A stretch of DNA of 40,576 bases, from contig NC_068984.1 in the NCBI RefSeq assembly GCF_001194135.2, positions 97,574,201 to 97,614,776 of the forward strand, written 5' to 3'. The position numbers and the translations under genes were made by a program. The notes beneath the pieces are model-generated. The model made no database searches and was not told where the DNA came from. It saw only the letters and a program-made list of their open reading frames with translations. This DNA is from Octopus bimaculoides (Eukaryota). Of the stretch, positions 2,085 through 33,128 are shown piece by piece (the first letter of the stretch is position 1; every line of letters begins with the position of its first letter).

Positions 2085-2553
2085 CACGATAAAGTGATGG
2101 TTTGTTGCCAATTTAATGTGGCAGTCCACGGAAAGGGAACAATGCTACTGCAACAAACCACTTTATCTTGCTGCTACTGTATAAGTCTCTCTGAGAGATT
2201 TAGAAATGAAATATTTCTAATTTTGTAGTGAATTCATTTCACTTGAAAAGGCGAATAAGCATCGACAGCTAGAAAGCCAAGCTACTCTAGACTGTTGAAG
2301 AGGAATGGGTCTGAAACTAGTCTCTGGATACTGGTTTGCTGGGTAGAGGAGTTTATCTCCTCTGATTGAAAACTTAAGGACACGGAACGCTTGTGTCACA
2401 TAGCCAACTGGTAACGAAATTTCCTGGGGTTTAATAGCATTAAAATTCTTTCCTTTCCTGGGATTGCCACATTAAGTTAGCAACAAACCATCAGTTTATC
2501 GTGCTGCTACTGTATAAGTCTCTGTGTGAGATTTAGAAACGCAATATTTCTAA
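2085..2553 (+). mobile_element. Hammerhead-bearing non-coding element (Penelope-like/retrozyme-like) with direct repeat and 5' inverted segment
   Basis: Direct repeat ~2150-2222 vs ~2480-2553 (gcaacaaacc...tttatc.tgctgctactgtataagtctc...atatttctaatt). Segment 2085-2147 is an inverted copy of ~2434-2503. A hammerhead motif lies at 2286-2328. Confidence 0.7.
2286..2328 (+). ncRNA. Type I minimal hammerhead ribozyme motif (A6U core variant)
   Basis: TCTAGA-CTGTTGA-AGA(ggaatggg)TCT-GAA-ACTAGT-C-TCTGGA. Helix I has 6 bp including one G.U, helix II has 3 bp, helix III is the palindrome ACTAGT, and the predicted GUC cleavage site falls after 2322. Confidence 0.7.
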
Positions 2554-2562
2554 TTATATATA

Positions 2563-2564
<2 letters not shown>

Positions 2565-2645
<81 letters not shown>
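2565..2645. repeat. (TG)n microsatellite
   Basis: About 40 perfect TG units. Confidence 0.97.
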
Positions 2646-2648
<3 letters not shown>

Positions 2649-2709
2649 CCAACGACACATACCTAATGCAACTAAAGGTCTCCAGAACTTCTAAAAACAC
2701 TTCACTCCT

Positions 2710-4076
2710 TCAAGTCAGTACCTCTCGGTAGACAATGTTCTTAGTAACAGTTCGCCCCCTTCTCCTTTCTTATCCGTCTGTCTACCACCTGTGACTTATT
2801 CATAGACATGGCATATGACAAACGGACAGCAAACTGGGTTCTCTCCAAGGTGAATGGCAAGCTAAGGTCACTTGGAGCCAGCTTTATTCTGGAGATGAGG
2901 ACACATCTGCCAATTAGTGAGCCGCTAATCAAGGAAGTCTCGTCTGAATGTTGATGCATGGCCACCATTTCCAGTCTTGTACCATTGCAGAGTCCATTGA
3001 GTCCATTCTGGATATAAATGTTATGTAGAAGCATTACTATTAGCCGGGTTTTAAACACAATTTATGAGGAGGCATTCCTTATGGTGTCAAAGAGTTTAGA
3101 AATTCAAGTGGATAGCGCTCAGCCGCAGCAGAATCATATGTGAAAACTTTACATGTACTATAATAGGTACAGCAGTCAGCTGGAAGTTGTCTCAGAATTT
3201 TCTCGTTGATCAGGAGGCAGTCTGAATTCTTTCGCGAAAGAATTACTCTGCTTCTTTTCTCTTCCTCAGATGCATTGTTGAAGCTATCCACCAGAGAGCC
3301 GTCAAAGTTTGAAATCTGAGGCACTTCTATGTCATCAGCAGCAAGACTAGGAACTTGTGGAGTTGTATATTTTCCATTGCCAAGATGCAAGAGCCATGCT
3401 GCAAATTCCCTTTGATCTGCTGTTGTCCTGATATTATGGTTTCATTTTTAATGGATGAAATTCAACCATAGAGGAGAATTTTTAATAGAGATTTCAGTAA
3501 TTGACTCACGAGTTCCTCTTGGCAATATGGGTAGGACTTGCCTAGAGTGTCCCCCCAAGAGCACAACTTTACCACCAAAAAAACAGCGGCAATGGTAGTG
3601 ATATCGCACAAGGCTTTATCAATAGCATAAAGAGCAAACGAATGGATCATAGAAAACTCATCCAAAATGATCAAATACAGGTTTCGTAAATGATTTGCAT
3701 GGTCTGAAGTGGCTGGTACATTACAAACGCTGGCCTCCATGAGTGGGACAGGCAACTTGAACAAAGTATGGATAGTATTTCCACCTGACATTAGTGTAGA
3801 AGCAATGCCTGTTCAAGCAACACTGCATACGTTACAGTTGTGCCTTCGCAGATAAGAAATTATGGTATTAAACAAATAAGTTTTACCACAATTTCCTGGT
3901 GCATCTACATAGAAAGAGGAGTGGTTGTGTACCTCACCTCTCCTCTTCTTATCTACAGGTTCAAGCACAGCATTAGCAATCAGTCTCTGTTTATCTGTAA
4001 GCATTAGCAAAACCTGGGTGATCGAGGTATTCATGATGGCCAAGCTGCAGTAATCCAATAGGTTCAGGCAGACCAA
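2710..4076 (-). pseudogene. Helitron PIF1-family (SF1B) helicase domain, frameshifted
   Basis: Walker A-like VDAPGNCGKTYLFN, GGNTIHTLFKLP, Walker B-like IILDEFSM, YPLEFLNSLTP, GLCNGTRL, QFAVRLSYAMSMNKSQ and TKNIVYREVL. Confidence 0.92.
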
Positions 4077-4103
4077 TTGCTAAACAATGAATGCCATTCT
4101 CTA

Positions 4104-6049
4104 TCAGAATTGCATTGAGTGCAGTCCCATGTTTTCTGCGTGTTCTACATTAAAACCTTGCTGCAAGAAATCTTCAATCATGGATTCCTTGTGAGTGGTC
4201 CACAGGTGAAGAGCATTTTCAGAGTTCATATACGTGCACAGGGCAGCAAACATAACACGCAACTGTAAGGGCATCCGACAGGCAGCAAACATAACACGCA
4301 ACTGTAAGGGCATCCGACAGGCAGCAGCTTCTAGCAAAGCATGTTCCAGTTTGTCATCGCTTGAGAGAAGACCGTATCTCAGGCATGATGCCTTAACTAT
4401 TCGCAAAATTTCTCTTTCTACAGTGCGCAAATCCTGGAGGCTCACGCGCCTGAAACATGTAGCAGCAACATTCACAAGTGAAATTTTTCTGTCTCTAGGG
4501 CTCACTGTATATATTCTACTGATGATATTAGTATTCATTTGTCTTGATGTTAATGTTCTAGTGTGCTCATTAAACACATAAAGTAGCGGAATGTCAGGGT
4601 ACAAGTGGTTCTTTGCATCAACATCGTCATGCACATTCAGTTTGAACCATGCAGTGAGGGTAGTCTCACGGTCCCTCTCTGCGTGAGCAGTTTGCTTAGC
4701 GCTGCCTCTGTGAAAGTAAACTCTTTGCTGGTCTTCAAGATATACTGCAAGTCTGTAGTCAGTGTGAGATGTATCATGTACCTTGAACTCTGACAGTCCC
4801 CACATTGCTTCTGGAGAAGAAACATATCGGCAAGCAAGACTATTAGTAATTTCATCGTGGGTTTGATTCTGCTCACAATCTGCCGCTGGATTGTCTTTTA
4901 CTTCAAAAGAAGTATTGTCATGTCCTTTGTACGCGTGCTTGAAGATGTATTCAATGTTTTTCACGGATGAACAAATTTCTACATAAATGTGAGCTCTGTA
5001 CTATTGTCAACTGAGTGACGTTCAATTTCGACTGTGACTCCAGTATAGCATCTTCTGTACTCTCGATAGACATTCAAATTGAAAAACGTTTCACCTCAGT
5101 AGTTCCTTAGGAATTTATTTTGACATGAGCTATTTTCCATACAAAGGAAGAAAGGATTATCAGTTCCGCATCATGCATTTTCTTACTAAATCGTGCAAGA
5201 CTGGATCATCATTGGCATCAGGAATTTCAGATGACACGATCTTATCTATGTCATCGCTGTTTCTGAGTTTGTCCTCGTTTCTTAACACTACCAACATGTG
5301 GCAGTGCGGAAGACTCCTCTTCTGAAACTCAATGATATGGACATGAGCCACTGGCACCCCAAAAATGTGTCTATACTTTATGTCCCTCATAAGTTCTGCA
5401 AGGTGGGACTTGTACACTCGGGCAAGTAAATCTGGCCTATTTTTAGGTGTTTCCTTTTGCTATTTTCTATCAACTATCGGGCTGCAAGTGTAAGTGATGA
5501 ACAAGTCTGGCTTAGCACATTTTGAAACAATATTGGTACATATTCCTTGACCTTCCTGTGAATGGGGAAGGCAGTATCACTGCCATTCCTGGTTCAATAT
5601 TCTCATCTGCTCCTGTGTTCAAATAGTCCATCAATCCATTGTACCTTTCCACTAGCAACTGGGTCTGAATGTTCCTAAGATATTGCAACCCCTAACCTTT
5701 AACCTTGACTTATGCCTCCACAACATAGTGTTGAAATAGCTGTAGTAATCTTGCATTGTCAGACGCTTACCCACACGAGTTCGGCGTTCCGCGACATGTT
5801 GCATCTCAAAATGCCATCCAAATTCCCGTGGGAAAACAGAATTGGGTAGCTCATAGGGTCGAAGTGGCATGACGTGTAAGATATTTTTTCAGGAGGCGCA
5901 TCTCTGGAATACACAATAATGTCTCTATTTTCAGGAGGGGCACCATTTTCTCCAGCAAGCACTACTGCTGTTTCATTGCTGGTGGGGAAATTGTAGCGCC
6001 TAATATCGGACCCTCTACTGGAACGTAACTCACATCTCCGTATTGGCAC
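4104..6049 (-). pseudogene. Helitron Rep (HUH endonuclease) domain, fragmented
   Basis: RRYNFPTSNETAVVL, FDPMSYPILF, PDLFITYTC (motif 1), IEFQKRSLPHCHML (HUH motif 2), IEYIFKHAYKGHD (motif 3-like), RYVSSPEAMW and TTLTAWFKLN. Confidence 0.92.
4242..4327. repeat. 39-bp in-frame tandem duplication inside Helitron A
   Basis: ggcagcaaacataacacgcaactgtaagggcatccgaca occurs twice (4242-4280, 4281-4319) plus a partial third copy. It encodes AACRMPLQLRVMF twice. Confidence 0.95.
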
Positions 6050-7057
6050 ATTGTCTCTTCTGGCTCTCTCCTCTCACTGGTTTAACTGCATGCATGTTCT
6101 TGTACAATTCTGCATTAGGATTAATTTGGTGGATAACATCATTTATTTTTCTCATAGTAACAGAGGAACACTCAGAATTTTGAGGCGCATCCATCCTGTA
6201 TTGCAGAGCTTCATCACCATCAATGATGTATAACTGGCTGTATTGCAGTTGATCATTAGCAGGATGCAGGTTTCTCGCCATCATGTGGTCAGTTTCGCCC
6301 TGAATGTGGAGGCAATACGCAATCCTACCTGGAAGCGCTGCCACTTTGATTCCAAATGACGCAAAGGAAAAGGTACAATTATAAGTCTCTAGATATGGCT
6401 GCAATGCAGGCACGTTCACTTTTCCATGGTGGCAACAACAGTTATTTTCGTTTCTAAACCTAAGCGCACCACAGTATTCACATATAATGTTCATTTCTCC
6501 TATGTTAAATTGTTCAGCACTGGCCTATCACACGCTGTCACTGCATCTGATGCCTCCTGAAATTGTCAATTTCACCAGCATTCATATTTTGAACTCTTTC
6601 TCGATATATTCCCCTTTGGTTTTGCTGATAAGTAACCCTGTCATGTTGATTCATGTTCCTTACCCTTTGCTGAAATAAGTTTCTCTGCTGCTCGCGGCAC
6701 TCTGCACGCTGTTCCTCATTCATATTTTCTCTCCTTTGCTTACATAAGTGTCTCTGTTGCTCGCGGTACTGTGTATGCCGTTTCTCATTCGTATTGTCCC
6801 ACCTTTGCTGTGATAAGTTTCTCTGCTGCTCGTGGTACTCTGCATGCCTTTCCTTATTCATATTGTTTCGTCTTGTTTGTTGTCTCCTCCTATATTGTTG
6901 CAGGTATTACTCGTGTTGTTAATCCTCCATTGACGCTCGCCTCAGCTGCTGGTGTTGCCTGTCTCTCTAGGATTTCCTGCCTCTGATCTTTCCTTATCCT
7001 CTGCCTGTAGAGCCTCATTCTCGCGCGAGCAGTTTCTACTTTTTGTTGCCGGTTCAT
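6030..7057 (-). pseudogene. Helitron RepHel N-terminus: Gln/Arg/Glu-rich repeats and a zinc-binding motif
   Basis: MNRQQKVETARARMRLYRQR... begins at 7057. It is followed by 23-aa EQQRNL.QQR.ENMNE.. repeats, then MNIICEYCGALRFRNENNCCCHHGKV, YNCTFSFASFG and LQYSQLYIIDG. Confidence 0.8.
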
Positions 7058-7666
7058 GATGAATGCAGTTTATAAGCACAAAAGGAATACAAGATAATAT
7101 TTATACAAAACACGAAGAAAAAATTGATAAAAATGGACTGTTATAGGAAATTCGGATCTTCTATGTTTCACTCACAAAATCAGCCCCCTTTAATTTTGCT
7201 CAGATTGTTTTCAATTTTGGTGTATCGTTGCAATACTAAATTTTGATTATTCTTAGGTAATTGCGTAATCTCGTAAATTAAGCCTGATGTTTATTTGGAA
7301 TTAAAGTTTGAAAATTTGGGTAGTTTTAGCCATCAACAGGCAGCAAAGCATTAACAACTTGTTACCATGACAACAGCACGTTGTGTCTGGATGCGTGCAT
7401 CTGCGCAAGTCAGTGGCACACGCGATAAAAAAAAAGACCTCTGCATTTTGAGTAACATTTTATTTCAATTTCAAAATTTGTTTTATTTATTTATTTTATT
7501 ACATCGAGATATTTGTTCGAAGCAGATTACGTTTGAATAACATTTGATTTCAGTTCCTAAATTCATTTCATTAGATATACAGATAAAAATCCCATCCCCG
7601 ATTTACAGTTTATACATATCTATACATGTATGTATAGACATGTGTGTCTACACAGAATGTCGCACG

Positions 7667-7706
<40 letters not shown>

Positions 7707-7894
7707 TACAAACTTTCTATCACCACTGTCTCCCTTTCCCTCTCACTCTGACTCTTTCTTTCTCACTACCTCTCTTCTCTTTCCTCTTATATATTATATG
7801 AAGAGCGTAACGGACGGACGAACAAACTAAGGTGGGAACAAGCAGAATTATAATATGATAAAATTAAATAATTTGTATTAATTTTTACCTAAAT

Positions 7895-8523
7895 NNNNNN
7901 NNNNNNNNNNNNNNNNNNNNNNNNNNNNNNNNNNNNNNNNNNNNNNNNNNNNNNNNNNNNNNNNNNNNNNNNNNNNNNNNNNNNNNNNNNNNNNNNNNNN
8001 NNNNNNNNNNNNNNNNNNNNNNNNNNNNNNNNNNNNNNNNNNNNNNNNNNNNNNNNNNNNNNNNNNNNNNNNNNNNNNNNNNNNNNNNNNNNNNNNNNNN
8101 NNNNNNNNNNNNNNNNNNNNNNNNNNNNNNNNNNNNNNNNNNNNNNNNNNNNNNNNNNNNNNNNNNNNNNNNNNNNNNNNNNNNNNNNNNNNNNNNNNNN
8201 NNNNNNNNNNNNNNNNNNNNNNNNNNNNNNNNNNNNNNNNNNNNNNNNNNNNNNNNNNNNNNNNNNNNNNNNNNNNNNNNNNNNNNNNNNNNNNNNNNNN
8301 NNNNNNNNNNNNNNNNNNNNNNNNNNNNNNNNNNNNNNNNNNNNNNNNNNNNNNNNNNNNNNNNNNNNNNNNNNNNNNNNNNNNNNNNNNNNNNNNNNNN
8401 NNNNNNNNNNNNNNNNNNNNNNNNNNNNNNNNNNNNNNNNNNNNNNNNNNNNNNNNNNNNNNNNNNNNNNNNNNNNNNNNNNNNNNNNNNNNNNNNNNNN
8501 NNNNNNNNNNNNNNNNNNNNNNN
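7895..8523. other. Assembly gap. Other N runs are at 12469-12669, 14488-14497, 18443-18452, 25483-25675, 28324-28738, 30956-31450, 32211-33014 and 36016-36197.
   Basis: Runs of n in the sequence. Confidence 0.97.
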
Positions 8524-8655
8524 TATATATATATATATATGTTCTACGCAATGCTGGCATCAGGTTTGTGCAAAATATGTCAAAAGTGGTAAAAGTTATG
8601 GTTGAAAATGGGGTGTAGCCAATTTTAGTGGGAAATCCTATAAGGAATCGGTTTA

Positions 8656-10150
8656 TCAATTTTTTATCCTAACTGAATGGAAAACACCAAAGGAATGCCT
8701 GCCACTGATAGTGTTTGGCCTTGGGATTTGTGGATGTACATGGCGAAGCATGGTCTCACCGGGAACTGCGGAAGTTAACCGGCATGTCTGACTCCGAGGG
8801 ATAAAGCTGCATTCTTGAAATGAAAACATTTTCACCTCTCCCGCACCCTGTAACAAGGTGGCATCAATCAAGTGGGGCGTTAGGGATTTGATTACTAAGC
8901 GGGTCCCGTTGCACTGTTTAGGCAGAAGTAAGTTTCTGATTAGCATAATTGGACGTCCGACCCTTAGCCTAAGAATGTGAGGTGGAAGCCCTGCTAGCTC
9001 CAATGAGTTAAGAAACTCGATAGGGTAATTGACAATGTCTTGGGGGTCAGAGGTCCGGTCAATCGATTTGTAGATGCGCTCCTCACCCGGAATTCGGTTT
9101 ATTTGCTGGTCGTTGAAAGAACTGATAGTTACGTTTTGGGGTGGCCAGGATGGTTCTTTCACTGAGCCAATTGATGTCTGCATTGTTACTTTCTAGATTG
9201 GGGAACACTGTTTCCAAAAGATCGGAATGGTTTTCCACGGTGTTGCACAGTTCAGAGATGTATATGTCGCCCCTATCATTCCTAGGGAGCTTGCCTTCTC
9301 CAAGGGTCAAAATGTCTTCAGAAAATGCAGCAGACGTGTTATCACTAAGTAAGTGCGCGCGCATGGTTGTGCTTAGACTTAAGGTCTTAACCTGGAGCCA
9401 CAAGATGGATGACTTGAGGCATGCGCGCACTTCATCAGCCCGGATCCGTTCAGGGATGACAGGAAGGGTTGGCCGGAAATCTCCTGACAGCAATTGGGTT
9501 ACACCACCCATAGAAGCTGTAGAATCCCTGATACCATTCAGTTACCGGTCTAGTGCCTCAAGGGCACCCTTATTGGTCATTGTGCATTCGTCCCATACAA
9601 TGAGACGGCACTGTCTAACAACTCCAGCTTCCTCTGAATTTTTGCTAATGTTACAAGTAGGAACCTCGGTCCTCACTAAATGTAAAGGCAGCTTGAATGC
9701 TGAGTGCGCCGTCCTACTTCCCGGCAATAACGTAGCAGCGATTCCCGAAGTAGCAACGGCTAGCGCAATTTGTTTCTCGCGACGAATTTTAGCAAGTATT
9801 AATTATGTTACAAAGGATTTGCCGGTACCTCTAGGAGCATTGAGGGAAAAAGTGCCACCCGCCTGTTTTCTAACGGCACTGACGACAGTTTTGTACACTA
9901 GCCTCTGATCAGGGAGCAATTTCAGTTCATTTACTCTCAGGTACTCCGCAAGGCCATCAGCGTCATACAACTCCAGAAGTAACTTTGGTGGGAGTGTGTT
10001 AACGTCCTGTCGAACATGAGGATGGCAAACTGATGCCCATTTTGAGCAGGGTATCTTTGATTTCAATCAGCGCATTATTGTAGATCAGGTCATTGTATCC
10101 AATGTCAGCATTAGGGCACTGTTGCTTTGCCAGTCATCATTTGCCTTGAC
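8656..10150 (-). pseudogene. Second Helitron PIF1-like helicase, frameshifted
   Basis: IYNNALIEIKD, LNAPRGTGKSFV (Walker A), ATSGIAATLLPGSRTAHSAFKLP, IVWDECTM (Walker B), GGVTQLLSGDFRPTLPVIP, YPIEFLNSLELAGLPPHILRLRVGRPIMLIRNL..CNGTRL and AMSIHKSQGQTL. Confidence 0.93.
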
Positions 10151-10216
10151 CACTGAGAAAGCAAAATTACGTACAGAGAATTTCATAAACAGAAATGAAT
10201 GGAAAAAATGATTCGT

Positions 10217-12208: not shown

Positions 12209-12209
<1 letters not shown>

Positions 12210-14921: not shown

Positions 14922-14956
<35 letters not shown>

Positions 14957-14962
<6 letters not shown>

Positions 14963-15392
14963 GAAGTATATTGCCACTTAAGTGTGGCTGACCCCTAGGG
15001 GTGGATGTTACTGTTGCTTTTAGCCCCAGGAGGACATCTCCTCCAGCTGGCTTATCGACACACTACTGTGTCCTGTTTGCCAAGGGAAGTTATCCCTCTC
15101 ATCGTGATCTGTAGCACGAACGGACCCGGGTTTAAGGGTTATTTCCCTTCGTCAGCGTCCGATAGCCACTGATCTTTGATGAGAGAGATAAATTCTTGGC
15201 AATCTTATGTATACTTTTCCAGTGACATCCACCACCCCTAGGGGTCAGCCACACTTAAGTGGCAATATACTTCACTTTATCGTGCAGTTACTGTTAATAC
15301 TTCATTTAGAGAATTAACATTGCTTGTTTTCACCTTTTCAATATCAGTGAAGAATTTCACTGGAAAAGTATACATAAGATTGCCAAGAATTT
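14957..15392. mobile_element. Second copy of the hammerhead-bearing Penelope-like/retrozyme-like family, with two interleaved perfect inverted repeats
   Basis: Perfect 48-bp IR at 14957-15004/15232-15279 and perfect 36-bp IR at 15190-15225/15357-15392. Shares tttatcgtgc.g.tactg, ttgcca.tt.a.tgtggc and ccccagga...ccag.tggct...gacaca...gtgtcct with the 2085-2553 element. Confidence 0.8.
15117..15161 (-). ncRNA. Type I hammerhead ribozyme motif (single G12U core substitution)
   Basis: CGGACG-CTGACGA-AGGG(aaataa)CCCT-TAA-ACCCGGGT-C-CGTTCG. Helix I has 6 bp with one G.U, helix II has 4 bp, and helix III is an 8-nt palindrome. The GUC site falls between 15123 and 15122. Confidence 0.8.
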
Positions 15393-15599
15393 GTGTGTCT
15401 GTGTTTGCCCCCCCCCCATCATCGCTTGACAACCGAGTTGGTGTGTTTACGTACCCGTAACTTAGAAGTTCGGAAAAAGTGACCGATAGAATAAGTACTA
15501 GGTTTACAAAGAATAATTCCAGGTGCCGATTTGTTCGGCTAAAGACGGTGCTCCATCATAGCCGCAGTCAAATGACTGAAACAAGTAAAAGGGTAAGAG
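15393..15599 (+). mobile_element. tRNA-derived SINE family 1, 3' half
   Basis: catcgcttgacaaccga..tggtgtgtttacgt.cccgtaacttag...gaccgatagaataagtactagg...gccgcagtcaaatgactgaaacaagtaaaag. Confidence 0.85.
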
Positions 15600-16504
15600 T
15601 ATTGATATTTCGCTACTTCAATGTTTTCAGTCACTATATAATGAACTGCTGGGTTACGTACAAATGTATTTGTGGAGAATATGTTATGCTTTCTTTTTCC
15701 TTGTATGTGGTAGTATATTCGTATGCATGAGTATAGACTTACATTTATGTATATTGATGCGCATGTATGAGTAAGCGTGCGTATTTATGTACGTGTGTAT
15801 ATTATGCATATATGCATGCTTATGGACGTATGGACATACTTATACATCGATGTATATATATATTCCTATGAGCGCACGCACATACACACACATACAAAAG
15901 TGTGCGTGTGTGTGTGTATGTGTGTGTGTGCGTGTGTGTGCGCACGCGATATGGATTCAGAGAATAGTGTGGCTATCATAGAAAGTTTCTCAAATGGATT
16001 CAACTAACAGACCACATAGCAATCCAATACAGAGGAATGTAATGTAGAATGCTCATGCAACCAAAATCCAGAAGATTCGACGATGAAATTAATTTATGCC
16101 GTGTATATAAAGTATAAAAATTAAGGAGGCTAGAGAGATGAATATATCTCTCAACTACTTGACATTTTGGGGATGACGGCTCTTTCGCAGAATTCTTCGT
16201 GTTATAATAATTTCAGTGTAGCGTAAATTATATTTACCCGTTTGCACTAATATGTACGCTATGCATTATACAATACAATTGTATAGTCACAAATCAATGC
16301 AAATAAAGAACGATATCTCGTTAGATCACAAGAACATCATGGTTATACGTGTTCTTGACGTTTTATGGTTTATATATATCTATATATATTTTTTCTGCAT
16401 GTGCATGTGCGCATAATAATAATGACATATATACACGTGTATATGTAAGCTTTCGCATATATTTTTGTACATCTTTATGTCTTACATGGTGTATATGTAT
16501 GTGA

Positions 16505-18144: not shown

Positions 18145-18957
18145 TATATAATCTTTTCTACTTGAGACACACAAGGCCCGAAATTTTGAGGGAGGGGCCC
18201 AGTCAGTTAGATCGACCCCAGTATGCAACTGGTACTTAATTCATCGACCCCGAAAGGATGAAAGCATAGTCGACTTCGGCGGAATTTGAACTCAGAACGT
18301 AAAGACAGACGAAATACCTATTTCTTTACTGCCCACAAGGGGCTATACACAGAGGGGACAAACAAAGACAGACAAACGGATTAAGTCGATTATATCGACC
18401 CCAGTGCGTAACTGGTACTATTTAATCGACCCCGAAAGGATGNNNNNNNNNNTCGACTTCGGCGGAATTTGAACTCAGAACGTAAAGACAGACGAAATAC
18501 CTATTTCTTTACTGCCCACAAGGGGCTATACACAGAGGGGACAAACAAAGACAGACAAACGGATTAAGTCGATTATATCGACCCCAGTGCGTAACTGGTA
18601 CTATTTAATCGACCCCGAAAGGATGAAAGGCAAAGTCGACCTCGGCGGAATTTGAACTCAGAACGTAACGACAGACGAAATACCGTTAGGCATTTCACCT
18701 GGCATGCTAACGTTTCTGCCAACTCGCCGCCATTAAATCCAATCTCTTCTACTCTAGGCACAAGGCTTGAAATTTTAGAGGAGGGGGTTGCAGTTGATTA
18801 GATCTATCCCAGTACGCAACTGGTACTTAATTTATCGGCCCCGAAAGGATGTAAGGCAAAGTAGACCTCGGCGGATTTTGAGCTCAGAACATAAAGACAG
18901 GCGGAAGACCACTAAACATTTCACCCGGCGTGCTAACGTTTCTGCCAGCTCGCCACC
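18145..18957 (-). mobile_element. Cluster of tRNA-derived SINEs with a Deu/Nin-like central domain (family 2), four head-to-tail units
   Basis: Minus-strand GGCGAGCTGGCAGAAACGTTAGC...GAGTTCAAATTCCGCCGAGGTCGACTTTGCCTTTCATCCTTTCGGGGTCGAT..AAGTACCAG is repeated. One unit is probably an assembly duplicate. Confidence 0.8.
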
Positions 18958-22400: not shown

Positions 22401-22881
22401 CCCCCAATCTCCTACTGACTTTGATCTATGCTTCCATTTTATCTTGAAATTATTCAAATATCGATAAAAATTATCTAGACAACCTAGTTTGCAGTGTATT
22501 TCCCATAAGGATGCACTATTCATAGTAAAAGTCAAGTTGTTCGGAAAAAAATATGAAACACAGTACAACCATCTGCATGATTTAGTAATCGATAATTGTA
22601 TCTGTCATGTGAAAATCGTATCCAGTTTCGTCTGCAAGAGCAAAAACTACACTGGTTCGTAATAGACTTCAAGTACAAGGGGTTTATTCAGGATCTTATC
22701 ATCAGTTACGAAAGTAATCGCACTTTATCTTTTTCTTGAACCATCGCCTCAGATTATACTAACAAGGACATGAAGACTCTAACAAATTTCTTTATTAATA
22801 CTTGGCGCAGATTCTATCATTATCTGCATGTTTACAAAGATTTACTTATTGCTTTCTTCTGCCTCATCAACTGAACGTGCA

Positions 22882-22952: not shown

Positions 22953-23340
22953 TGTGTGCGTGTGTGTGTGCGCGCGTGCGCGTGCGTGTGTGAGTTTGTG
23001 TGTCTGTGTTTGTCCCCCCAACATCCCTTGACGACCGATGCTGGTGTGTTTAAGTCCCCGTCACCTAGCGGTTCGGCACGTTCAGTTGATGAGCAGAAGA
23101 CAGCAATAATTAAATCTTTGTAAACTTACAGGTAATAATAAAATCTCCGGCAAATATGAATAAAAAAATTTGTTACAGAGTCTTCATGTCCTTGTTAGTA
23201 TAATCTGAGGTGATGATTCAAGAAAAAGAAAAAGTACTATGCTTACGAAGAATAAGTCCTGGGGTCGATTTGGTCGACTAAAGGCAGTGCTCCAGCATGG
23301 CCGCAGTCAAATGATTGAAACAAATAAAAGAATAAAAGAA
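22884..23340 (+). mobile_element. SINE family 1, (TG)n plus 3' half, interrupted by an inverted copy of the upstream flank
   Basis: SINE sequence runs to ...gcggttcggca and resumes at agtactatgcttacgaagaataagtcctggggtcgat.... The insert 23076-23235 is approximately the reverse complement of 22721-22880. Confidence 0.85.
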
Positions 23341-24305
23341 TTAAGATCCATGTAAGATCATTAATAAAGTGGAACAATCTTGGAGATACAGTTTACGCAA
23401 ATAGGTATTGTACAGCAGTGTTACATATAGCTGTGTAATTAAGGCCATGCTCTATATACTGGTTCTTGGATAGGTAATAAAGCAAATCCAGAGGAGTTGA
23501 ATTATATCTAAGTGAAAAAAGTTTTAGTTAATAATTTCAGAGCATGAGATAATTAAAGATTAAAGCTTGGTTCAATGTGTTCATAGAAATAAGAAAAATG
23601 TAATAATTATTGAGAAAGAATGAAAAATTAAACTAGCAACAAATTTAATGGAATAATTTGTTAATCTGTCTCTGGGTAGACATTTAGATGAACGATTATC
23701 TACAAATTGACTGAAGTTGGTGTAGAGATTAAAACCGGAGCGTACGATACAAATCATGTAGGCATTATAAAAAGTGTCTGGAAGAAAATATATCCTAGAT
23801 TTCTGTATCAGAAGATGGTGTTAGGCACAATTAAAGTTGATATAAAAGTGTACTGTTAGAAAAATATAAGAGGAACGCAAAATCTCCTTAAACTGGAAAA
23901 TACATTTTTGACTTACATGTGGAAAGGCATGTGAATCTAAACTAAATTTGGGTTGGGCGTGGACATTTAATGTTCAGAAAAGATAGTAAAAAGCTTTTCT
24001 CAAGAATTATATGAAAACTTGATCGGAGTCATTGCATATTCGGTATTAATGTATACAACAATTATTTTATAATCACTTTAGTGTTTGTTAACACATTAGC
24101 TAACATGTGAGGTTAACATATTCATTACTGAATCAATTTGTAAAACATTTCAGATATTATAATGACAAGGAAAAGAATTCACCCATTTTTTTGAATAGTT
24201 TATCGTAGGAGGAACATTTGTTATTTTTAAATACTGATGTAAATGATTTTAGATGAAACACTTATTTTTCTTTAATTTATGCAATTGATCATGTTTATTA
24301 AGGAT

Positions 24306-24757: not shown

Positions 24758-24908
24758 AAGAATTTATAAATATATAAATATACGAAGATTTATAAATATA
24801 TAAATATACAAAGATTTATAAATATATAAATATACGAAGATTTATAAATATATAAATATACGAAGATTTATAAATATATAAATATACGAAGATTTATAAA
24901 TATATAAA
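24758..24908. repeat. 26-bp AT-rich minisatellite, about 5.8 copies
   Basis: Unit gaagatttataaatatataaatatac. Confidence 0.92.
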
Positions 24909-25033
24909 ACTCATAAACATATAAATATATAAATACATAGATGTACTTGCGAGATTGATTGTCCGTATTAGAATCAATGAGGATAGATGAGAATGTATAA
25001 AATGATTTAAGAGGAATCCTGAATAAGTGAAAA

Positions 25034-26010: not shown

Positions 26011-26041
26011 TTATATATTACGATTAAAACCCGAATATCTG

Positions 26042-26042
<1 letters not shown>

Positions 26043-26083
<41 letters not shown>

Positions 26084-26345: not shown

Positions 26346-27143
26346 TTATGTACATCCCCAGAAATGCTGTAATAAATATTTACATATCTAAGTAAGAAAA
26401 AGCCCAATACCTCAGGTCATAATATTCGTAGCATCTCTTGCTTTTGATGAAGATCTAAGCAAGATGCTTCCCCATACGATTTGTAACCAGTTTTACGTTA
26501 AAATTCACAGTTCCACAACATATAATCACAAAGTTCTACAAATATTTGTACTCAATGCTGCATTGCCCAAATTTCAAAGACCAAATGAACGAGTTTTATC
26601 CTGAGATTCTGTAATAAGAATTTCTGAATTTGGCAACACTCTATCAACTACCATTTAAAAATTAACGCGATAAATAACTGTACCTAATTAATTAAGAAAT
26701 TCTTTCATCATCGAATATTGTTATTTCTTTTTAAATACTTTCAATTTTTCTAATAATCCTATTTTAAATATAAATATAGGCATTGAAGTATGGATACTTT
26801 ATGTTTGCTTGATATCGATGAATAAATCTGCACTTAATTTTAAAATAATCCGTAATGAGAGCTGCAAAACAATAGATATTAAAATAAAGCAGTTGTATAT
26901 TATATACATGAAAATTAAGAGCTGAGCACAACAGTGGTGTTTCCTGTCAGCTGACCTGTTTTAATTATAAAGTGAAATGTTTATGCGAGATGATCAATAA
27001 TAATTGAGCAGGTTAAGGACAAAGCATTAGCAACATTCATCATGCAGCTACACAGCTTCATTCCAACAACACAAACATACCTGTTAATGCTACTAAGTAA
27101 GAATGAGAATGTAATGAAATATCTGGGTCTTAACAGAAAAGCA

Positions 27144-27470
27144 GTGGTTCATTTTGTTTGGAAAAAGAGGAAAAATCCAATTAAATCCAATTAGATCGGG
27201 TATTATTAAGTAAATGCATGATCAGAAAGAAAGGTTAGATAGTGATCCATAACGAAAGAAAACGGATTCTAGCAGTTCCAAAGTTGGACAAATACTGTTC
27301 AACTTTGGAACTGTTAGTATTTATCCAACTTTGGAAGTGCAAGCATCCATTTACCTTCGCCGTGGATAACTATCGAACCATTCTCTCTGATCATGGATTT
27401 ACCTAAGGAATACCCGATGTAAATGGATTTAATGGGATTTTTCCTCCTTTTCTTAGACATTATGAACCAC
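27144..27470. repeat. ~325-bp intronic fold-back inverted duplication
   Basis: Arm 27144-27296 matches the reverse complement of arm 27316-27470 at roughly 80% by eye. A nested 21-bp hairpin lies at 27269-27289/27297-27317. Confidence 0.88.
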
Positions 27471-27515
27471 AACAATAATTGATGAGGAACATCCTTCCGC
27501 CGTAACATATGTTTA

Positions 27516-27519
<4 letters not shown>

Positions 27520-27612
<93 letters not shown>
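27520..27612. repeat. (CT)n microsatellite
   Basis: Direct observation. Confidence 0.97.
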
Positions 27613-27614
<2 letters not shown>

Positions 27615-27693
27615 ATGACAGTATACTCAGCATATGAAACCTTCGCTAGACATGTTCCAATAGATGGTATAACCTAGAAACAGCTGTCACGGA
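27607..27693 (+). ncRNA. Degenerate hammerhead-like motif with long helix II (U4C)
   Basis: TCTCT-CCGATGA-CAGTATAC...GTATAACCTA-GAA-ACAGCTGT-C-ACGGA. The 8-nt palindromic helix III and C17 are present, and helices I and II are imperfect. Confidence 0.35.
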
Positions 27694-28025
27694 AAATTTA
27701 AAGTTTTTGTTGCACAGCTAAAATAAAAATTCTTGTCACGCATTGACAAACAGCTTGTCTTTTCTACTTTAAACTGTAACTACCGACTCAAGGAGAAGTC
27801 ACTTCTAGCGGCTTCGGATAAGGCAGTCACTAAATCACACTTTCCACGGCAGTTCAAAACGGAATGTTAGGGTATATATATATATATGTATATATGTATG
27901 TATAAATCTTTAGTATGGAAAACAGAAAGTAAACGTACCGGATTCTGTCATTAAGAAGCATAAAATTTAAAGAATAATTGAAATAAATTCTTGTAATGTC
28001 AGACGTTGAAGTTGATATAGTGCAT

Positions 28026-28090
28026 GTATGTATGTATGTATGTATGTATGTATGTATGCATGTATGTATGTATGTATGTATGTATGTATG
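28026..28090. repeat. (TGTA)n microsatellite
   Basis: Direct observation. Confidence 0.93.
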
Positions 28091-28197
28091 GGTGTACGTA
28101 TATGAGAAATTACCTTGGAATATAAATATTCAATTTGCAGTAGAAAACATTGTTGTGGTTAATTGAAATAACTATTTACTGTTGATCTTTTTTACAG

Positions 28198-28323
28198 ACC
28201 AATGCATACATAATGGAATAAGATATGAAGGAGCATTTAAGATCGACTGCAACACGTGTGTATGTGAGGAATATGGCAAAGCAGTCTGTACAAATTTACG
28301 TTGTGATTATGGACAGGGATCTA
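28198..28323 (+). CDS. Second coding exon, 5' part (first six-Cys module), running into a gap
   Basis: Polypyrimidine tract plus tttttttacag acceptor. Reads (Y)QCIHNGIRYEGAFKIDCNTCVCEEYGKAVCTNLRCDYGQGS. Confidence 0.82.
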
Positions 28324-28738
28324 NNNNNNNNNNNNNNNNNNNNNNNNNNNNNNNNNNNNNNNNNNNNNNNNNNNNNNNNNNNNNNNNNNNNNNNNNNNNN
28401 NNNNNNNNNNNNNNNNNNNNNNNNNNNNNNNNNNNNNNNNNNNNNNNNNNNNNNNNNNNNNNNNNNNNNNNNNNNNNNNNNNNNNNNNNNNNNNNNNNNN
28501 NNNNNNNNNNNNNNNNNNNNNNNNNNNNNNNNNNNNNNNNNNNNNNNNNNNNNNNNNNNNNNNNNNNNNNNNNNNNNNNNNNNNNNNNNNNNNNNNNNNN
28601 NNNNNNNNNNNNNNNNNNNNNNNNNNNNNNNNNNNNNNNNNNNNNNNNNNNNNNNNNNNNNNNNNNNNNNNNNNNNNNNNNNNNNNNNNNNNNNNNNNNN
28701 NNNNNNNNNNNNNNNNNNNNNNNNNNNNNNNNNNNNNN

Positions 28739-30292
28739 CAATATCAAGAGGGTCAAAATTTCGCTGATGCTTGCAACACTTGCCGTTGTATAAACGGTCA
28801 AGTAGATTGTACAACAAGAATCTGTCAATGTACATATCAAGGACGAACCTATAATATTGGCCAAAGATTTGGTGAATGTGATGAATGCCAATGTTTGTCT
28901 AGTGGCACAGTCCAGTGTTCTAACAAGCCATGTAAATGCATTTATAACGGAAATACCTACCGAATTGGCGAAAGATTTGCAAACGGCTGCAATACATGCA
29001 CATGTAAAATCGATGGTAGTGTAGACTGCACTACAAATCCATGTACCTGTACTTACAATCATAGGGTTTATAATATTGGGCAGAAATTTAACGATGACTG
29101 CAATACTTGTACATGTCAAATTAACGGTCAAATTGAGTGCACATATAAAACGTGTCGATGTACACACAAAGGACAAACTTATAAAATTGGTCAGAGATTT
29201 CATGAAGATTGTAACCAATGCCAATGTTTATCAACTGGATATGTTCAATGTACAACCAAAGCTTGCAAATGTACGTACAACAACCAGATTTACAATGTAG
29301 GTCAAAAATTTAGACAGGGTTGTAATACATGTACGTGTGAAGTGAACGGTAGAGTAAGCTGTACTAATAACCCTTGTAATTGCCTTTACAATGGAAACAC
29401 CTACCAAATAAGTGCTACATTTAGAAAAGACTGTAATACGTGCACATGTAAAGCCGATGGAAGTGTAGACTGCACGACAAATCCATGTACCTGTACTTAC
29501 AAAACCAGAGTTTATAATTTCGGAGCACAATTCAACGATGACTGCAACACTTGTACATGTCAAAATAACGGTCAAGTTGAGTGCACATATAAAACGTGTC
29601 GATGTACACACAAAGGACAAACTTATCAAATTGGTCAGAAATTTTATGAAGATTGTAACCAATGCCAATGTTTATCAACTGGATATGTCCAATGTACAAC
29701 CAAAGTTTGCAAATGTACTTACAACAACCAGATTTACAATGTAGGTCAAACATTTAGACAGGGTTGTAATAGATGTACGTGTGAAGTGAACGGGAGAGTA
29801 AGCTGTACTAATAACCCATGTCAATGCCTTTACAATGGAAACACCTACCGAATCGGAGATTCATTTAGAAAAGGCTGCAATACATGCACTTGTAAAATCG
29901 ATGGTAGAGTAGAGTGCACAACAAATCTATGCACCTGCAATTACAACGGCAAGCATTACGACATTGGTTCTATATGGTTTAATGATTGCAACAAATGTCA
30001 GTGCACTTCTGGAGGAAGAGCGGTTTGTGAACAGAAACCATGCACGAAACCCTGTATACACAAAGGAAATACATATTCCGCTGGCCAAACATTTAAAGAT
30101 GACTGCAACACCTGTAGATGCGGACAGTTTGGTCGAGTATCCTGTACTAAAATGTACTGTCCCCCAACCACGTGCCAATATTACGGAAAAACTTACAAAG
30201 AGGGACAAACATTTATGACTCAAGATAGATGCAACGTTTGTCGATGTTCAAATGGAAATGTCAAGTGTACCAAATACGATTGTTATAAACAG
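28739..30292 (+). CDS. Tandem pacifastin-like / VWC-like six-cysteine repeat region of a secreted protein (14 modules after the gap)
   Basis: Open frame from the gap edge with no stops. The ~37-aa unit is C-x-Y-x-G-x2-Y-x2-G-x2-F-x3-C-N-x-C-x-C-x3-G-x3-C-T-x3-C, and its C-terminal part matches the pacifastin signature C-N-x-C-x-C-x2-3-G-x3-4-C-T-x3-C. It ends at the consensus donor CAG|GTGAGT (phase 0); read-through would stop at 30311-30313. Confidence 0.92.
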
Positions 30293-32006
30293 GTGAGTAA
30301 AGTTTTCTATTAGTTTTGATCTCCCTAATATCACCAGTCTTATCCCGATATAATTACGCATCATAAACAGATACAAAATAACAAGGAATTAAGTAATATT
30401 TAGCGTAAGAACTGGAATTCTGTCACTGTACTATATTTATGCAACCAACAAAAACTGGTATCAGTGATTCGATTTTGATCTTCATTTGAACTAGTTCATT
30501 TTATTGACACTACCATTATCATGAAGAGATCCAGTGTCTCCTTATTTGTAAACATGAGATTTGTATATATGCGTATAGTTAATAATTCATATGGAAGTAA
30601 ATTATTTACTTTCAATATTTCAACTCACTTTATTGCTCTTTTTGTGAAACCAGTAGACTATCTTTCACATTACGTTACCATTGTACGAATCATTGCGTTA
30701 CAGATTTGCAAAATTTACGATATATTGTCTCACGTTTCAGCATAAAGTTCGTGAGCGAGTGAGTTGGAGTTTTCTGTTTATTATTGCGCCTGGTGAAATA
30801 TCTATACTTTGTTGTAAGATAATATAATATTTATTGAATCTAATATACACTTTTTAAGTAGAAATTTCACTCTGTAGTTAGTCTATGTAATTGTTTTTAA
30901 TTTGTATACAAAATATGTATGTCCAATCTGATAAATATATTAATTTCTTGTAATTNNNNNNNNNNNNNNNNNNNNNNNNNNNNNNNNNNNNNNNNNNNNN
31001 NNNNNNNNNNNNNNNNNNNNNNNNNNNNNNNNNNNNNNNNNNNNNNNNNNNNNNNNNNNNNNNNNNNNNNNNNNNNNNNNNNNNNNNNNNNNNNNNNNNN
31101 NNNNNNNNNNNNNNNNNNNNNNNNNNNNNNNNNNNNNNNNNNNNNNNNNNNNNNNNNNNNNNNNNNNNNNNNNNNNNNNNNNNNNNNNNNNNNNNNNNNN
31201 NNNNNNNNNNNNNNNNNNNNNNNNNNNNNNNNNNNNNNNNNNNNNNNNNNNNNNNNNNNNNNNNNNNNNNNNNNNNNNNNNNNNNNNNNNNNNNNNNNNN
31301 NNNNNNNNNNNNNNNNNNNNNNNNNNNNNNNNNNNNNNNNNNNNNNNNNNNNNNNNNNNNNNNNNNNNNNNNNNNNNNNNNNNNNNNNNNNNNNNNNNNN
31401 NNNNNNNNNNNNNNNNNNNNNNNNNNNNNNNNNNNNNNNNNNNNNNNNNNATAACGAAGTTATCCATTTGAATATCTGGGATGAAAAATATTTCAATACT
31501 TCAATACTTGAATGATTGTGCTAAAAATTATATTCTGCACCTTATAAAAACATAAATAATCTTTCTTTTAAATTCTGGGACAAAGCCAGTAATGTTGAGG
31601 TGAGGGGCAAATTGATTACACAGACCGCAATATTTGATTGGTACTTTATTTTATCGACCCTGGAAAGACAAAGTAAATTTGGTCAAATTATTTCTGGATT
31701 GTTGAAAGAATCTTGTATTTAATATTTCGAAAATTGCAAGTCAGGAGCTAATGAACGAGAATAAGGAACATCCATAACAACAACACGGCAATAGTTTCAT
31801 AACAAACATAAAACTGAGCAGAATAAGAAACATTGATGAAGAGCTGGAAACGTATTGTTCCAGATTAACTTGGAAATCACAAACATTGTGATTAAAAGTG
31901 GAACCTGTCACGTTTTCAGTAATTCGAGCTGCCCATAAAATACACACACACATACAGACAGACACATACACATATACATGCGTATATATATATTAGTATG
32001 AATTTG

Positions 32007-32007
32007 T

Positions 32008-32045
<38 letters not shown>

Positions 32046-32060
32046 CTAGTAGTAGTAGTA
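32007..32060. repeat. (AGT)n microsatellite
   Basis: Direct observation. Confidence 0.9.
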
Positions 32061-33015
32061 TCATAGATACGAGCAACTTAACATTAAAAAATACTTCTAG
32101 CTTATGCTGGCAAACTTAACATGCATGCATAGAAACAAATATACCTAAATAAATACTTACATATAGGCATATATATATTTGTATGTATATGTATGTATAT
32201 ATATATATATNNNNNNNNNNNNNNNNNNNNNNNNNNNNNNNNNNNNNNNNNNNNNNNNNNNNNNNNNNNNNNNNNNNNNNNNNNNNNNNNNNNNNNNNNN
32301 NNNNNNNNNNNNNNNNNNNNNNNNNNNNNNNNNNNNNNNNNNNNNNNNNNNNNNNNNNNNNNNNNNNNNNNNNNNNNNNNNNNNNNNNNNNNNNNNNNNN
32401 NNNNNNNNNNNNNNNNNNNNNNNNNNNNNNNNNNNNNNNNNNNNNNNNNNNNNNNNNNNNNNNNNNNNNNNNNNNNNNNNNNNNNNNNNNNNNNNNNNNN
32501 NNNNNNNNNNNNNNNNNNNNNNNNNNNNNNNNNNNNNNNNNNNNNNNNNNNNNNNNNNNNNNNNNNNNNNNNNNNNNNNNNNNNNNNNNNNNNNNNNNNN
32601 NNNNNNNNNNNNNNNNNNNNNNNNNNNNNNNNNNNNNNNNNNNNNNNNNNNNNNNNNNNNNNNNNNNNNNNNNNNNNNNNNNNNNNNNNNNNNNNNNNNN
32701 NNNNNNNNNNNNNNNNNNNNNNNNNNNNNNNNNNNNNNNNNNNNNNNNNNNNNNNNNNNNNNNNNNNNNNNNNNNNNNNNNNNNNNNNNNNNNNNNNNNN
32801 NNNNNNNNNNNNNNNNNNNNNNNNNNNNNNNNNNNNNNNNNNNNNNNNNNNNNNNNNNNNNNNNNNNNNNNNNNNNNNNNNNNNNNNNNNNNNNNNNNNN
32901 NNNNNNNNNNNNNNNNNNNNNNNNNNNNNNNNNNNNNNNNNNNNNNNNNNNNNNNNNNNNNNNNNNNNNNNNNNNNNNNNNNNNNNNNNNNNNNNNNNNN
33001 NNNNNNNNNNNNNNC

Positions 33016-33128
33016 ATATATCTGTTTCCAGTGAAATTATTCACTGTTAATACCTCGTTCAGAGATCTAACATTGCTTGTTTTCACTTTTTCGAGATCAG
33101 TGAATAATTTCACTGGAAAAAGATATAT
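33016..33128. mobile_element. Third, short fragment of the hammerhead-element family, folded into a hairpin (no ribozyme part)
   Basis: 31-bp arms 33016-33046/33098-33128 with 1 mismatch. The interior actgttaatacctcgttcagagatctaacattgcttgttttcac is homologous to ~15288-15360. Confidence 0.8.

What the first reader, a model, noticed from the sequence alone, without database searches (positions are those of the whole stretch)
2085..33128. Non-coding hammerhead-bearing family whose three copies all carry a 5' inverted segment
Seen: loci 2085-2553, 14957-15392 and 33016-33128 share sequence (tttatcgtgc.g.tactg; ttgcca.tt.a.tgtggc; actgttaatac...aacattgcttgttttcac). In each, an antisense piece precedes a sense piece. 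Locus 2 can be read as a circularly permuted ~355-nt monomer, and none of the loci encodes a protein. Inference: a retrozyme-like or non-autonomous Penelope-like family reverse-transcribed from multimeric or circular RNA with frequent template switching. Internal palindromes CACTTAAGTG and ACCCCTAGGGGT could promote the switches. I cannot tell whether it has been described.
Basis: partly seen in the sequence, partly recalled or inferred. Interest (0 to 1): 0.85.

Follow-up and report, generated by a model that had tools for sequence, protein, structure and literature searches.

The report
Decayed hammerhead retroelement copies, head-to-head
Three short non-coding repeats in this invertebrate genome window are worn-out copies of a small ribozyme-carrying mobile element of an already known kind. 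Their odd "backwards piece in front" layout is the known insertion scar of Penelope-like retroelements, so the finding is real but largely ordinary.

Summary
Loci 2087-2555, 14957-15392 and 33016-33135 are related. Each starts with an antisense piece followed by a sense piece, and none has a credible ORF.

Loci 1 and 2 share the cyclic module order X-Y-M-X. The unit is 330 nt in locus 1, where 1.22 units sit in tandem, and 347 nt in locus 2. Locus 2's left 272 nt is shown to be antisense, because its middle part matches locus 1's only when reverse-complemented.

At the same place in the M module, both loci carry a metazoan-style type I hammerhead layout: a 6-bp helix I with compensatory changes, a 3-4-bp helix II, and a palindromic loop III followed by UC. 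Each copy has one core substitution, and Rfam detects neither.

Partial tandem, an adjacent inverted 5'-truncated copy, microsatellite or AT-rich targets and a hammerhead together form the published signature of Penelope-like element (PLE) insertions and of animal "non-LTR retrozymes". The best reading is dead copies of a non-autonomous, PLE-dependent retrozyme-like family, which makes this a new member of a known kind.

No outside copies could be retrieved, so family-wide frequencies remain untested.

The parts
2087..2152 (-). Locus 1 antisense piece (end of module M plus module X). Its outer end lies at the X|Y boundary.
   Evidence: RC is 82% identical over 66 nt to sense 2438-2503. nhmmer gives 2158-2082(-) at E 9e-8.
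2150..2555 (+). Locus 1 sense piece of 1.22 units in the order (part of X)-Y-M-X-(part of Y). It holds direct repeats 2150-2227 and 2480-2555.
   Evidence: The direct repeats are 89.5% identical with a 330-nt period.
2286..2328 (+). Type I hammerhead-like motif: tctaga CUGUUGA AGAGGAAUGGGUCU GAAA CUAG UC | tctgga. The predicted cut falls after 2322, and the core carries an A6->U substitution.
   Evidence: Found by the descriptor scan and laid out in the pair table. Rfam gives no hit.
2556..2644 (.). (TA)4 TC (TG)40 microsatellite that abuts the 3' end of locus 1.
14925..14958 (.). (TA)17 microsatellite that abuts the outer end of the locus 2 antisense piece.
14957..15228 (-). Locus 2 antisense piece. 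Its reverse complement reads end-of-Y, then M, then X.
   Evidence: M2 matches locus 1's M only when reverse-complemented (z 6.6, 0/500 shuffles, against z 2.4 for the same strand). nhmmer places mono1 on 15081-14956(-) at E 3.4e-4.
15117..15161 (-). Type I hammerhead-like motif: cggacg CUGACGA AGGGAAAUAACCCU UAAA CCCGGG UC | cgttcg. The predicted cut falls between 15123 and 15122, and the core carries a G12->U substitution.
   Evidence: Rfam gives no hit.
15223..15392 (+). Locus 2 sense piece X-Y. The junction with the antisense piece is at cagtga 15223-15228, a 6-9-nt microhomology.
   Evidence: X arms are 93% and Y-end arms 97% identical. Similarity to the internal copy stops at 15392.
33016..33046 (-). 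Locus 3 antisense piece (end of Y), cut off on its left by the assembly gap 32211-33014.
   Evidence: RC is 97% identical to 33098-33128. The gap is listed.
33043..33135 (+). Locus 3 sense piece (module Y only). The junction microhomology is actg at 33043-33046.
   Evidence: 86% identical to 15290-15376. nhmmer gives E 1.9e-13.

Best explanation
The three loci are decayed insertions of a small non-coding, non-autonomous retroelement of the animal 'non-LTR retrozyme' type, meaning a derivative that depends on Penelope-like elements (PLEs).

The unit is about 330-350 nt and cyclic, with module order X-Y-M. Module M holds a type I hammerhead with a short palindromic helix III. In a tandem or rolling-circle transcript that hammerhead would cut out unit-length RNA that can circularise.

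The inferred mechanism is as follows. A PLE reverse transcriptase/GIY-YIG endonuclease supplied in trans cuts both DNA strands at an AT-rich or microsatellite site. It then primes cDNA on both strands from preferred internal sites of a multimeric or circular template. The two 5'-truncated cDNAs meet head-to-head and are joined through a few bases of microhomology. The result is an antisense piece directly upstream of a sense piece.

Shown here: the homology between loci, the orientations, the permutation, the hammerhead layout with compensatory changes, and the junctions.

Inferred: the RNA intermediate, PLE dependence, two-strand priming, and past ribozyme activity.
For: 1. Cyclic order and more-than-unit length. 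Locus 1 holds 1.22 units with a 330-nt period. Locus 2's left part is antisense, since its M module is homologous to locus 1's only after reverse complementing (z 6.6 against 2.4; nhmmer).

2. Hammerhead layout at the homologous position in both loci.
- Helix I is 6 bp in both, and 5 of the 6 pairs differ between the copies while pairing is kept.
- Helix II is 3-4 bp.
- A15.1-U16.1 closes a palindromic loop, CUAG in one copy and CCCGGG in the other, followed by UC.
- The descriptor gives 2 hits in the window and 0 in 100 simulated windows.
- This matches the published metazoan type I layout: helix I 6 bp, helix II 4 bp, helix III 1-2 bp with a small palindromic loop, active as dimers (PMC4209133).

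3. All three copies have the antisense-then-sense layout, with different inner breakpoints. The arms are 82-97% identical, as expected for two products of one event.

4. PLE insertions are described as partial tandems that often carry an inverted 5'-truncated copy at the 5' end. They also show (TA)n/(CA)n target bias and cause assembly trouble (PMC8557442). A purified PLE protein cleaves and extends both strands and starts reverse transcription at internal sites (PMC11167929).

5. The antisense pieces of loci 1 and 2 both begin within 4 nt of the X|Y boundary.

6. Two of the five readable ends abut long perfect microsatellites, while only 5.2% of window positions lie that close to one. Locus 3 abuts the A/T-rich tail of a LINE.

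7. Unit size, GC of 39-43% and lack of ORFs fit non-LTR retrozymes, which in mussel are 350-390 bp (PMC7229834).
Against: - There are only three copies, from two diverged subfamilies (52% global identity between units). One copy is cut by a gap.
- Each hammerhead has a substitution at an essential core base (A6 or G12), and both have A-U instead of the usual G10.1-C11.1. Rfam reports no hammerhead even at E<=10.
- The descriptor was written after the motif had been seen.
- No locus has two hammerheads, so none could itself release a unit RNA.
- No PLE RT/GIY-YIG gene is in the window. The RT fragments present are LINE-like.
- No target-site duplications were found.
- The 'tail' between the two start positions would be 52 and about 112 nt, longer than the published 30-40 nt.
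- No copies from elsewhere could be retrieved.
Confidence: 0.66

Rival explanations
1. The loci are heavily 5'-truncated ends (pseudo-LTR/UTR) of an ordinary autonomous Penelope-like element, not a separate small family.
For: PLE pseudo-LTRs carry hammerheads and give the same tandem/inverted layout (PMC8557442, PMC4209133). Retrozymes and pseudo-LTRs are sequence relatives (bioRxiv 10.64898/2026.07.22.740005).
Against: Locus 1 returns to X-Y after only 330 nt, with no ORF in between. Locus 2 closes the same cycle in 347 nt. A PLE tandem would have a period of several kb. No PLE ORF is present in the window.
Confidence: 0.12
2. This is a SINE-like element mobilised by a LINE, and its 5' inversions arose by L1-style twin priming.
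For: Twin priming gives exactly an inverted 5' segment joined by microhomology to a sense 3' segment (established knowledge for L1). LINE fragments are abundant in the window, and the sense pieces of loci 1 and 2 are followed by TG-rich runs that could be tails.
Against: All 3 copies are inverted, against roughly a quarter of human L1 insertions (my recollection of the L1 literature, not checked here). There is no poly(A) and no TSD. There is no similarity to the 3' ends of the window's LINEs. The TG run right of locus 2 belongs to another repeat that is also found at 22998-23347. Hammerheads with tandem units are the retrozyme/PLE hallmark.
Confidence: 0.12
3. This is a DNA element with built-in terminal inverted repeats (MITE or foldback), and the inverted arms are part of its fixed structure.
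For: The arms are 31-66 nt long. TA dinucleotides flank 14959-15278, and the loci fold strongly (circular fold z -5.6 for unit 2).
Against: The inner breakpoints differ in all three copies. Module M is sense in locus 1 but antisense in locus 2 relative to X-Y. The X-Y junction is conserved across subfamilies, so X is not the end of an independent element. Locus 1 has no matching TSD.
Confidence: 0.05
4. The inverted pieces are assembly artefacts or chance.
For: This is a draft assembly with nine gaps. Locus 3 touches a gap, and a perfect 173-nt duplication flanks the 10-N gap at 18443-18452. PLE structures are known to disturb short-read assemblies (PMC8557442).
Against: The arms are imperfect (82-97%) and carry indels, unlike collapsed or chimeric reads. 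The motif counts are far above shuffles. Loci 1 and 2 contain no gap.
Confidence: 0.04

Closest known systems
Animal non-LTR retrozymes (Cervera & de la Pena 2020, PMC7229834; Li et al. 2026 preprint)
   Same: A non-coding unit of a few hundred nt (330/347 here, 350-390 in mussel) with low GC. It has a type I hammerhead with a short palindromic helix III, a tandem or permuted arrangement that implies a multimeric or circular RNA template, and a self-paired RNA.
   Different: These loci hold 1.2 units or less and only one hammerhead each, and that hammerhead is mutated. The papers read here do not describe an inverted 5' piece for retrozymes. RNA circles were not tested.
Penelope-like elements and their insertion architecture (Evgen'ev & Arkhipova 2005; Craig et al. 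2021, PMC8557442; Frangieh et al. 2024, PMC11167929)
   Same: Partial tandem, an inverted 5'-truncated copy immediately upstream, microsatellite or AT-rich targets, a hammerhead in the repeated non-coding part, and defined internal start points.
   Different: There is no RT/GIY-YIG ORF in the loci or in the window. The offset between the two start points (52 and ~112 nt) is longer than the 30-40-nt 'tail'.
L1 twin priming (Ostertag & Kazazian 2001)
   Same: An inverted 5' segment is joined to a sense 3' segment with microhomology at the junction.
   Different: No poly(A), no TSD and no LINE-derived tail. The inversion appears in all copies, and a hammerhead and tandem unit are present.

Membership tests
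Type I hammerhead ribozyme (metazoan form) | Intact catalytic core CUGANGA ... GAAA ... UH | tested here: not met
   Locus 1 has CUGUUGA (A6->U). Locus 2 has UAAA (G12->U). Each copy carries one substitution, at a different position, so a two-copy consensus would be intact.
Type I hammerhead ribozyme (metazoan form) | Three-helix layout: helix I ~6 bp, helix II ~4 bp, helix III 1-2 bp with a small palindromic loop (PMC4209133) | tested here: met
   Helix I is 6 bp in both copies, helix II is 3 and 4 bp, and A15.1-U16.1 closes the CUAG or CCCGGG loop. The 10.1-11.1 pair is A-U rather than G-C.
Type I hammerhead ribozyme (metazoan form) | Compensatory changes that keep the helices | tested here: met
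   Five of the six helix I pairs differ between the two copies, four of them on both sides and one as U-G to G-U, with pairing kept. The loop is palindromic in both despite a different sequence. Only two sequences were available.
Type I hammerhead ribozyme (metazoan form) | Match to Rfam hammerhead covariance models | tested here: not met
   No hammerhead hit at gathering score or at E<=10, including scans of roughly 550-nt sub-windows.
Type I hammerhead ribozyme (metazoan form) | Self-cleavage | not testable with these tools
   This needs in vitro transcription of dimeric constructs.
Non-LTR retrozyme | Non-coding unit of 150-450 bp with low GC and no LTR/PBS/PPT | tested here: met
   Units are 330 and 347 nt with GC 0.39 and 0.43. 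The longest open stretch is 84 aa with no Pfam hit.
Non-LTR retrozyme | Tandem copies, each with a hammerhead (at least a dimer) | tested here: inconclusive
   Locus 1 has 1.22 units with one hammerhead. Locus 2 has a permuted single unit. No array lies in the window, and no outside copies were obtainable.
Non-LTR retrozyme | Expressed as unit-length circular RNA | not testable with these tools
   No transcriptome was available. The circular fold is more stable than shuffles (z -2.2 and -5.6), which is only compatible with this feature.
Penelope-like element (autonomous) | ORF with a telomerase-like RT and a GIY-YIG endonuclease | tested here: not met
   The loci have no ORF. The window's RT fragments match R2/LINE-1-type RTs, and no GIY-YIG was found in the ORFs scanned. 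The six-frame scan of the window was not exhaustive.
Penelope-like insertion architecture | Partial tandem plus an adjacent inverted 5'-truncated copy | tested here: met
   Locus 1 has the tandem. All three loci have the inverted piece, though the third is cut by a gap.
Penelope-like insertion architecture | Microsatellite or AT-rich target and a 30-40-bp tail at one end | tested here: inconclusive
   Two of the five readable ends abut long microsatellites against a 5% background. The offsets of 52 and ~112 nt are longer than the published tail.
LINE-dependent SINE with twin priming | Poly(A) or LINE-derived 3' tail, TSDs, pol III head | tested here: not met
   There is no poly(A), no TSD and no tRNA-like head. 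No similarity to the window's LINEs was found.
MITE / foldback | Fixed terminal inverted repeats with constant TSDs and a fixed internal orientation | tested here: not met
   Breakpoints differ between copies, and the orientation of M flips relative to X-Y.

The most novel reading that the evidence does not exclude
Animal non-LTR retrozymes integrate by the Penelope-type reaction, in which both DNA strands are cut and both prime cDNA from a fixed internal site. Here that site is the X|Y boundary used by two independent copies. Such insertions would leave a diagnostic inverted 5' piece, which would give a purely genomic read-out of which enzyme mobilises retrozymes and where reverse transcription starts on a circular or multimeric ribozyme RNA.
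Probability: 0.35. Interest if true: 0.5.

Novelty: new member of a known kind. Interest (0 to 1): 0.33.

Why it matters
Current papers propose that animal retrozymes depend on Penelope-like elements, based on co-occurrence and sequence similarity. The insertion scars seen here would be independent structural support for that link if they hold genome-wide. Those scars are the inverted 5'-truncated piece, the shared start point and the microsatellite targets. They would also map the reverse-transcription start on the retrozyme RNA. For annotation, the case shows that such copies are missed by Rfam and can be mistaken for MITEs or hairpins.

Tried and rejected
- **Rfam.** Scans at gathering score and at E<=10, on the whole window and on sub-windows, gave no hammerhead, only microsatellite-driven miRNA look-alikes.
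- **Strict regex.** A strict CUGANGA...GAAA regex with a helix II found nothing in the loci. The motifs appeared only once one core mismatch was allowed.
- **Public collections.** Two viral scans and one metagenome scan with conserved 17-19-mers gave only 20-24-nt chance matches.
- **Reaching the same genome through its LINE ORF.** This gave only 50-62% identical Logan hits, and their contigs held no family copy.
- **Searching 1.84 billion proteins for spurious ORFs across the repeat.** This gave one unrelated LRR protein. The host genome is evidently not in these collections, so I did not spend the last word-indexed protein search.
- **tRNA-derived SINE head.** ARAGORN found nothing.
- **MITE reading.** Rejected because the orientation of module M flips between loci and the breakpoints differ.
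Rejected because the palindromes are not at the junctions.
- **MAFFT alignment of the two hammerheads.** It misplaced the loop gap, so pairs were tabulated by script instead.
Full report
**Setting**

The window is eukaryotic draft sequence with 38% GC and nine N runs. It is very rich in (TA)n, (TG)n and (TACA)n microsatellites. It carries PIF1/Helitron-like fragments, LINE-type RT fragments and one cysteine-rich VWC/pacifastin-repeat ORF. The best named relatives of that ORF are Octopus and Mytilus proteins at 33-34% identity. The host is therefore probably a mollusc or another invertebrate that is not represented in the protein collections.

**Gaps**

No gap lies inside locus 1 (2087-2555) or locus 2 (14957-15392). 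Gap 32211-33014 ends one base before locus 3. The left extent of locus 3 is therefore unknown and cannot be tested without reads.

**Observation**

Self-BLAST confirms the family.
- Locus 2 15290-15376 matches locus 3 33043-33129 at 86% over 87 nt.
- Locus 1 matches locus 2 at 66-74% over 72-109 nt.
- nhmmer with unit-length queries extends the locus 1-locus 2 homology to 185 nt (E 7e-7) and finds no further copies in the window.
The motif TTGCCA..TGTGGC sits on the + strand in the left arms and on the - strand in the right arms.

**Anatomy**

I call the modules X (~55-65 nt), Y (~112 nt) and M (~180-195 nt).

Locus 1 reads RC(end of M + X) at 2087-2152, followed by a sense run (part of X)-Y-M-X-(part of Y) at 2150-2555. 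Its direct repeats 2150-2227 and 2480-2555 are 89.5% identical and 330 nt apart, which makes 1.22 units.

Locus 2 reads RC(X) at 14957-15012, then a 183-nt middle, then RC(end of Y) at 15190-15228, then sense X-Y at 15223-15392. The key test was the orientation of that middle part. It aligns to locus 1's M only when reverse-complemented. The local score is 20 against a shuffle mean of 9.8 +/- 1.6 (z 6.6, 0 of 500 shuffles). For the same strand the z is 2.4. nhmmer agrees, placing unit 1 on 15081-14956(-) at E 3.4e-4. So 14957-15228 is one continuous antisense piece (end of Y, then M, then X). Both loci give the same cyclic order X-Y-M-X, and the locus 2 unit is 347 nt long.

Locus 3 is RC(end of Y) at 33016-33046 joined to sense Y at 33043-33135.

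Arm identities are 82% for locus 1, 93% and 97% for locus 2, and 97% for locus 3.

The inner junctions differ between copies. They are cagtga at 15223-15228 (6-9 nt of microhomology), actg at 33043-33046 (4 nt), and about 0-1 nt at 2150.

The outer ends of the antisense pieces of loci 1 and 2 both fall at the X|Y boundary, at ...ctttatcgtg and ...ctttat.

**Hammerhead**

Rfam reports none. A descriptor for the metazoan type I layout, allowing one core mismatch, gives exactly two hits in the window and none in 100 simulated windows. The two hits lie at the homologous place in M:
- 2286-2328(+): tctaga CUGUUGA AGAGGAAUGGGUCU GAAA CUAG UC|tctgga
- 15161-15117(-): cggacg CUGACGA AGGGAAAUAACCCU UAAA CCCGGG UC|cgttcg

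Helix I is 6 bp in both copies, and five of the six pairs differ between them while pairing is kept. Helix II is 3 and 4 bp. A15.1-U16.1 closes a loop that is palindromic in both copies although its sequence differs.

This is the layout that Cervera & de la Pena give for most metazoan hammerheads: helix I 6 bp, helix II 4 bp, and helix III 1-2 bp with a small palindromic loop, active as dimers in tandem repeats (PMC4209133).

Each copy has one substitution at an essential core base, A6 in locus 1 and G12 in locus 2, so the present copies are probably inactive. Both have A-U at positions 10.1-11.1. The descriptor was written after I had seen the first motif, so its statistics are indicative only. 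The compensatory changes are the stronger argument.

**Coding capacity and RNA fold**

The longest open stretches are 84, 59 and 57 aa with no Pfam match. Folded as circles, the units are more stable than dinucleotide shuffles (z -2.2 and -5.6).

**Surroundings**

Locus 1 is followed by (TA)4TC(TG)40. Locus 2 is preceded by (TA)17. Only 5.2% of window positions lie within 12 nt of such a repeat.

The TG-rich run to the right of locus 2 is the start of another repeat, 15393-15608, which is also present at 22998-23347. Locus 3 abuts the A/T-rich tail of a minus-strand LINE that has a second copy at 37225 onwards.

No target-site duplications were recognisable. No PLE gene is in the window, because the RT fragments match R2 and LINE-1 enzymes.

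**Comparison with what is known**

[quoted passage not shown] They also report a tail at one end, a (TA)n/(CA)n target bias and resulting assembly problems (PMC8557442).
- Frangieh et al. show that a purified PLE protein cleaves and extends both strands and starts reverse transcription at internal RNA sites (PMC11167929).
- Animal non-LTR retrozymes are tandem units of about 150-450 bp with type I hammerheads, 350-390 bp in mussel, and are expressed as circles (PMC7229834). A 2026 preprint argues they are non-autonomous PLE derivatives.

The present loci fit all of this. In the retrozyme papers I could read, an inverted 5' piece is not mentioned: the word is absent from the 2020 text and appears only in the reference lists of two others. 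That is an absence in those texts, not proof of novelty.

**Verdict**

The best explanation is dead copies of a retrozyme-like, PLE-dependent non-autonomous family, whose antisense-plus-sense layout is the known PLE insertion scar (confidence about 0.66).

The rivals are truncated ends of an autonomous PLE, LINE twin priming, a MITE, and an assembly artefact. They are weaker for the reasons listed under each.

The main limit is sample size. No outside copies could be obtained, so the fraction of copies with inversions, the consensus hammerhead and the autonomous partner all remain to be tested in the host genome.

Noticed in passing
window 28182-30313 (+), interrupted by gap 28324-28738: A long ORF made of about 12 tandem 37-aa (111-nt) cysteine-rich repeats matches Pacifastin_I and VWC (E 3.6e-66 and 3.8e-47). 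Its best named relatives are Octopus bimaculoides and Mytilus 'kielin/chordin-like' proteins at only 33-34% identity. It is probably one large exon of a secreted protease-inhibitor-like or VWC-repeat gene.
   Followed up: partly
window 15393-15608 and 22998-23076 + 23227-23347: A second repeat family, about 82% identical between its two copies, begins with a TG-rich run and a C-run (gtgtgtctgtgtttgcccccc...). One copy starts exactly where locus 2 ends. The other follows a long (TG)n and is split by a roughly 150-nt insert.
   Followed up: partly
window 22777-22862 and 23093-23178: These 86-nt inverted arms (85% complementary) enclose a (TG)n tract and part of the repeat above. This may be a MITE-like element or another head-to-head insertion.
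   Followed up: no
window 18270-18442 and 18453-18625: A 173-nt stretch is repeated at 100% identity on both sides of the 10-N gap 18443-18452. This looks like unmerged overlapping contig ends, that is, an assembly artefact.
   Followed up: no
window 2741-9908 (-): A run of broken ORFs includes PIF1 helicase and Pif1 2B domains (E 1e-13 to 1e-14). This is a decayed Helitron-like element, interrupted by gap 7895-8523.
   Followed up: partly
window 33167-35033 and 37225-39529 (-): Two decayed copies of one LINE are 69-93% identical in pieces, and their RT is closest to the R2 and LINE-1 enzymes. A further LINE-like RT fragment at about 1480-2086 (+) ends abruptly where locus 1 begins.
   Followed up: partly
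window 27206-27296 and 27316-27406: A near-perfect hairpin has 91-nt arms (82% complementary) and a 19-nt spacer. It gives only a weak plant-miRNA look-alike hit in Rfam, and its nature is unknown.
   Followed up: no
window 24761-24923: A tandem array of a 26-nt AT-rich unit (GATTTATAAATATATAAATATACRAA), about six copies.
   Followed up: no
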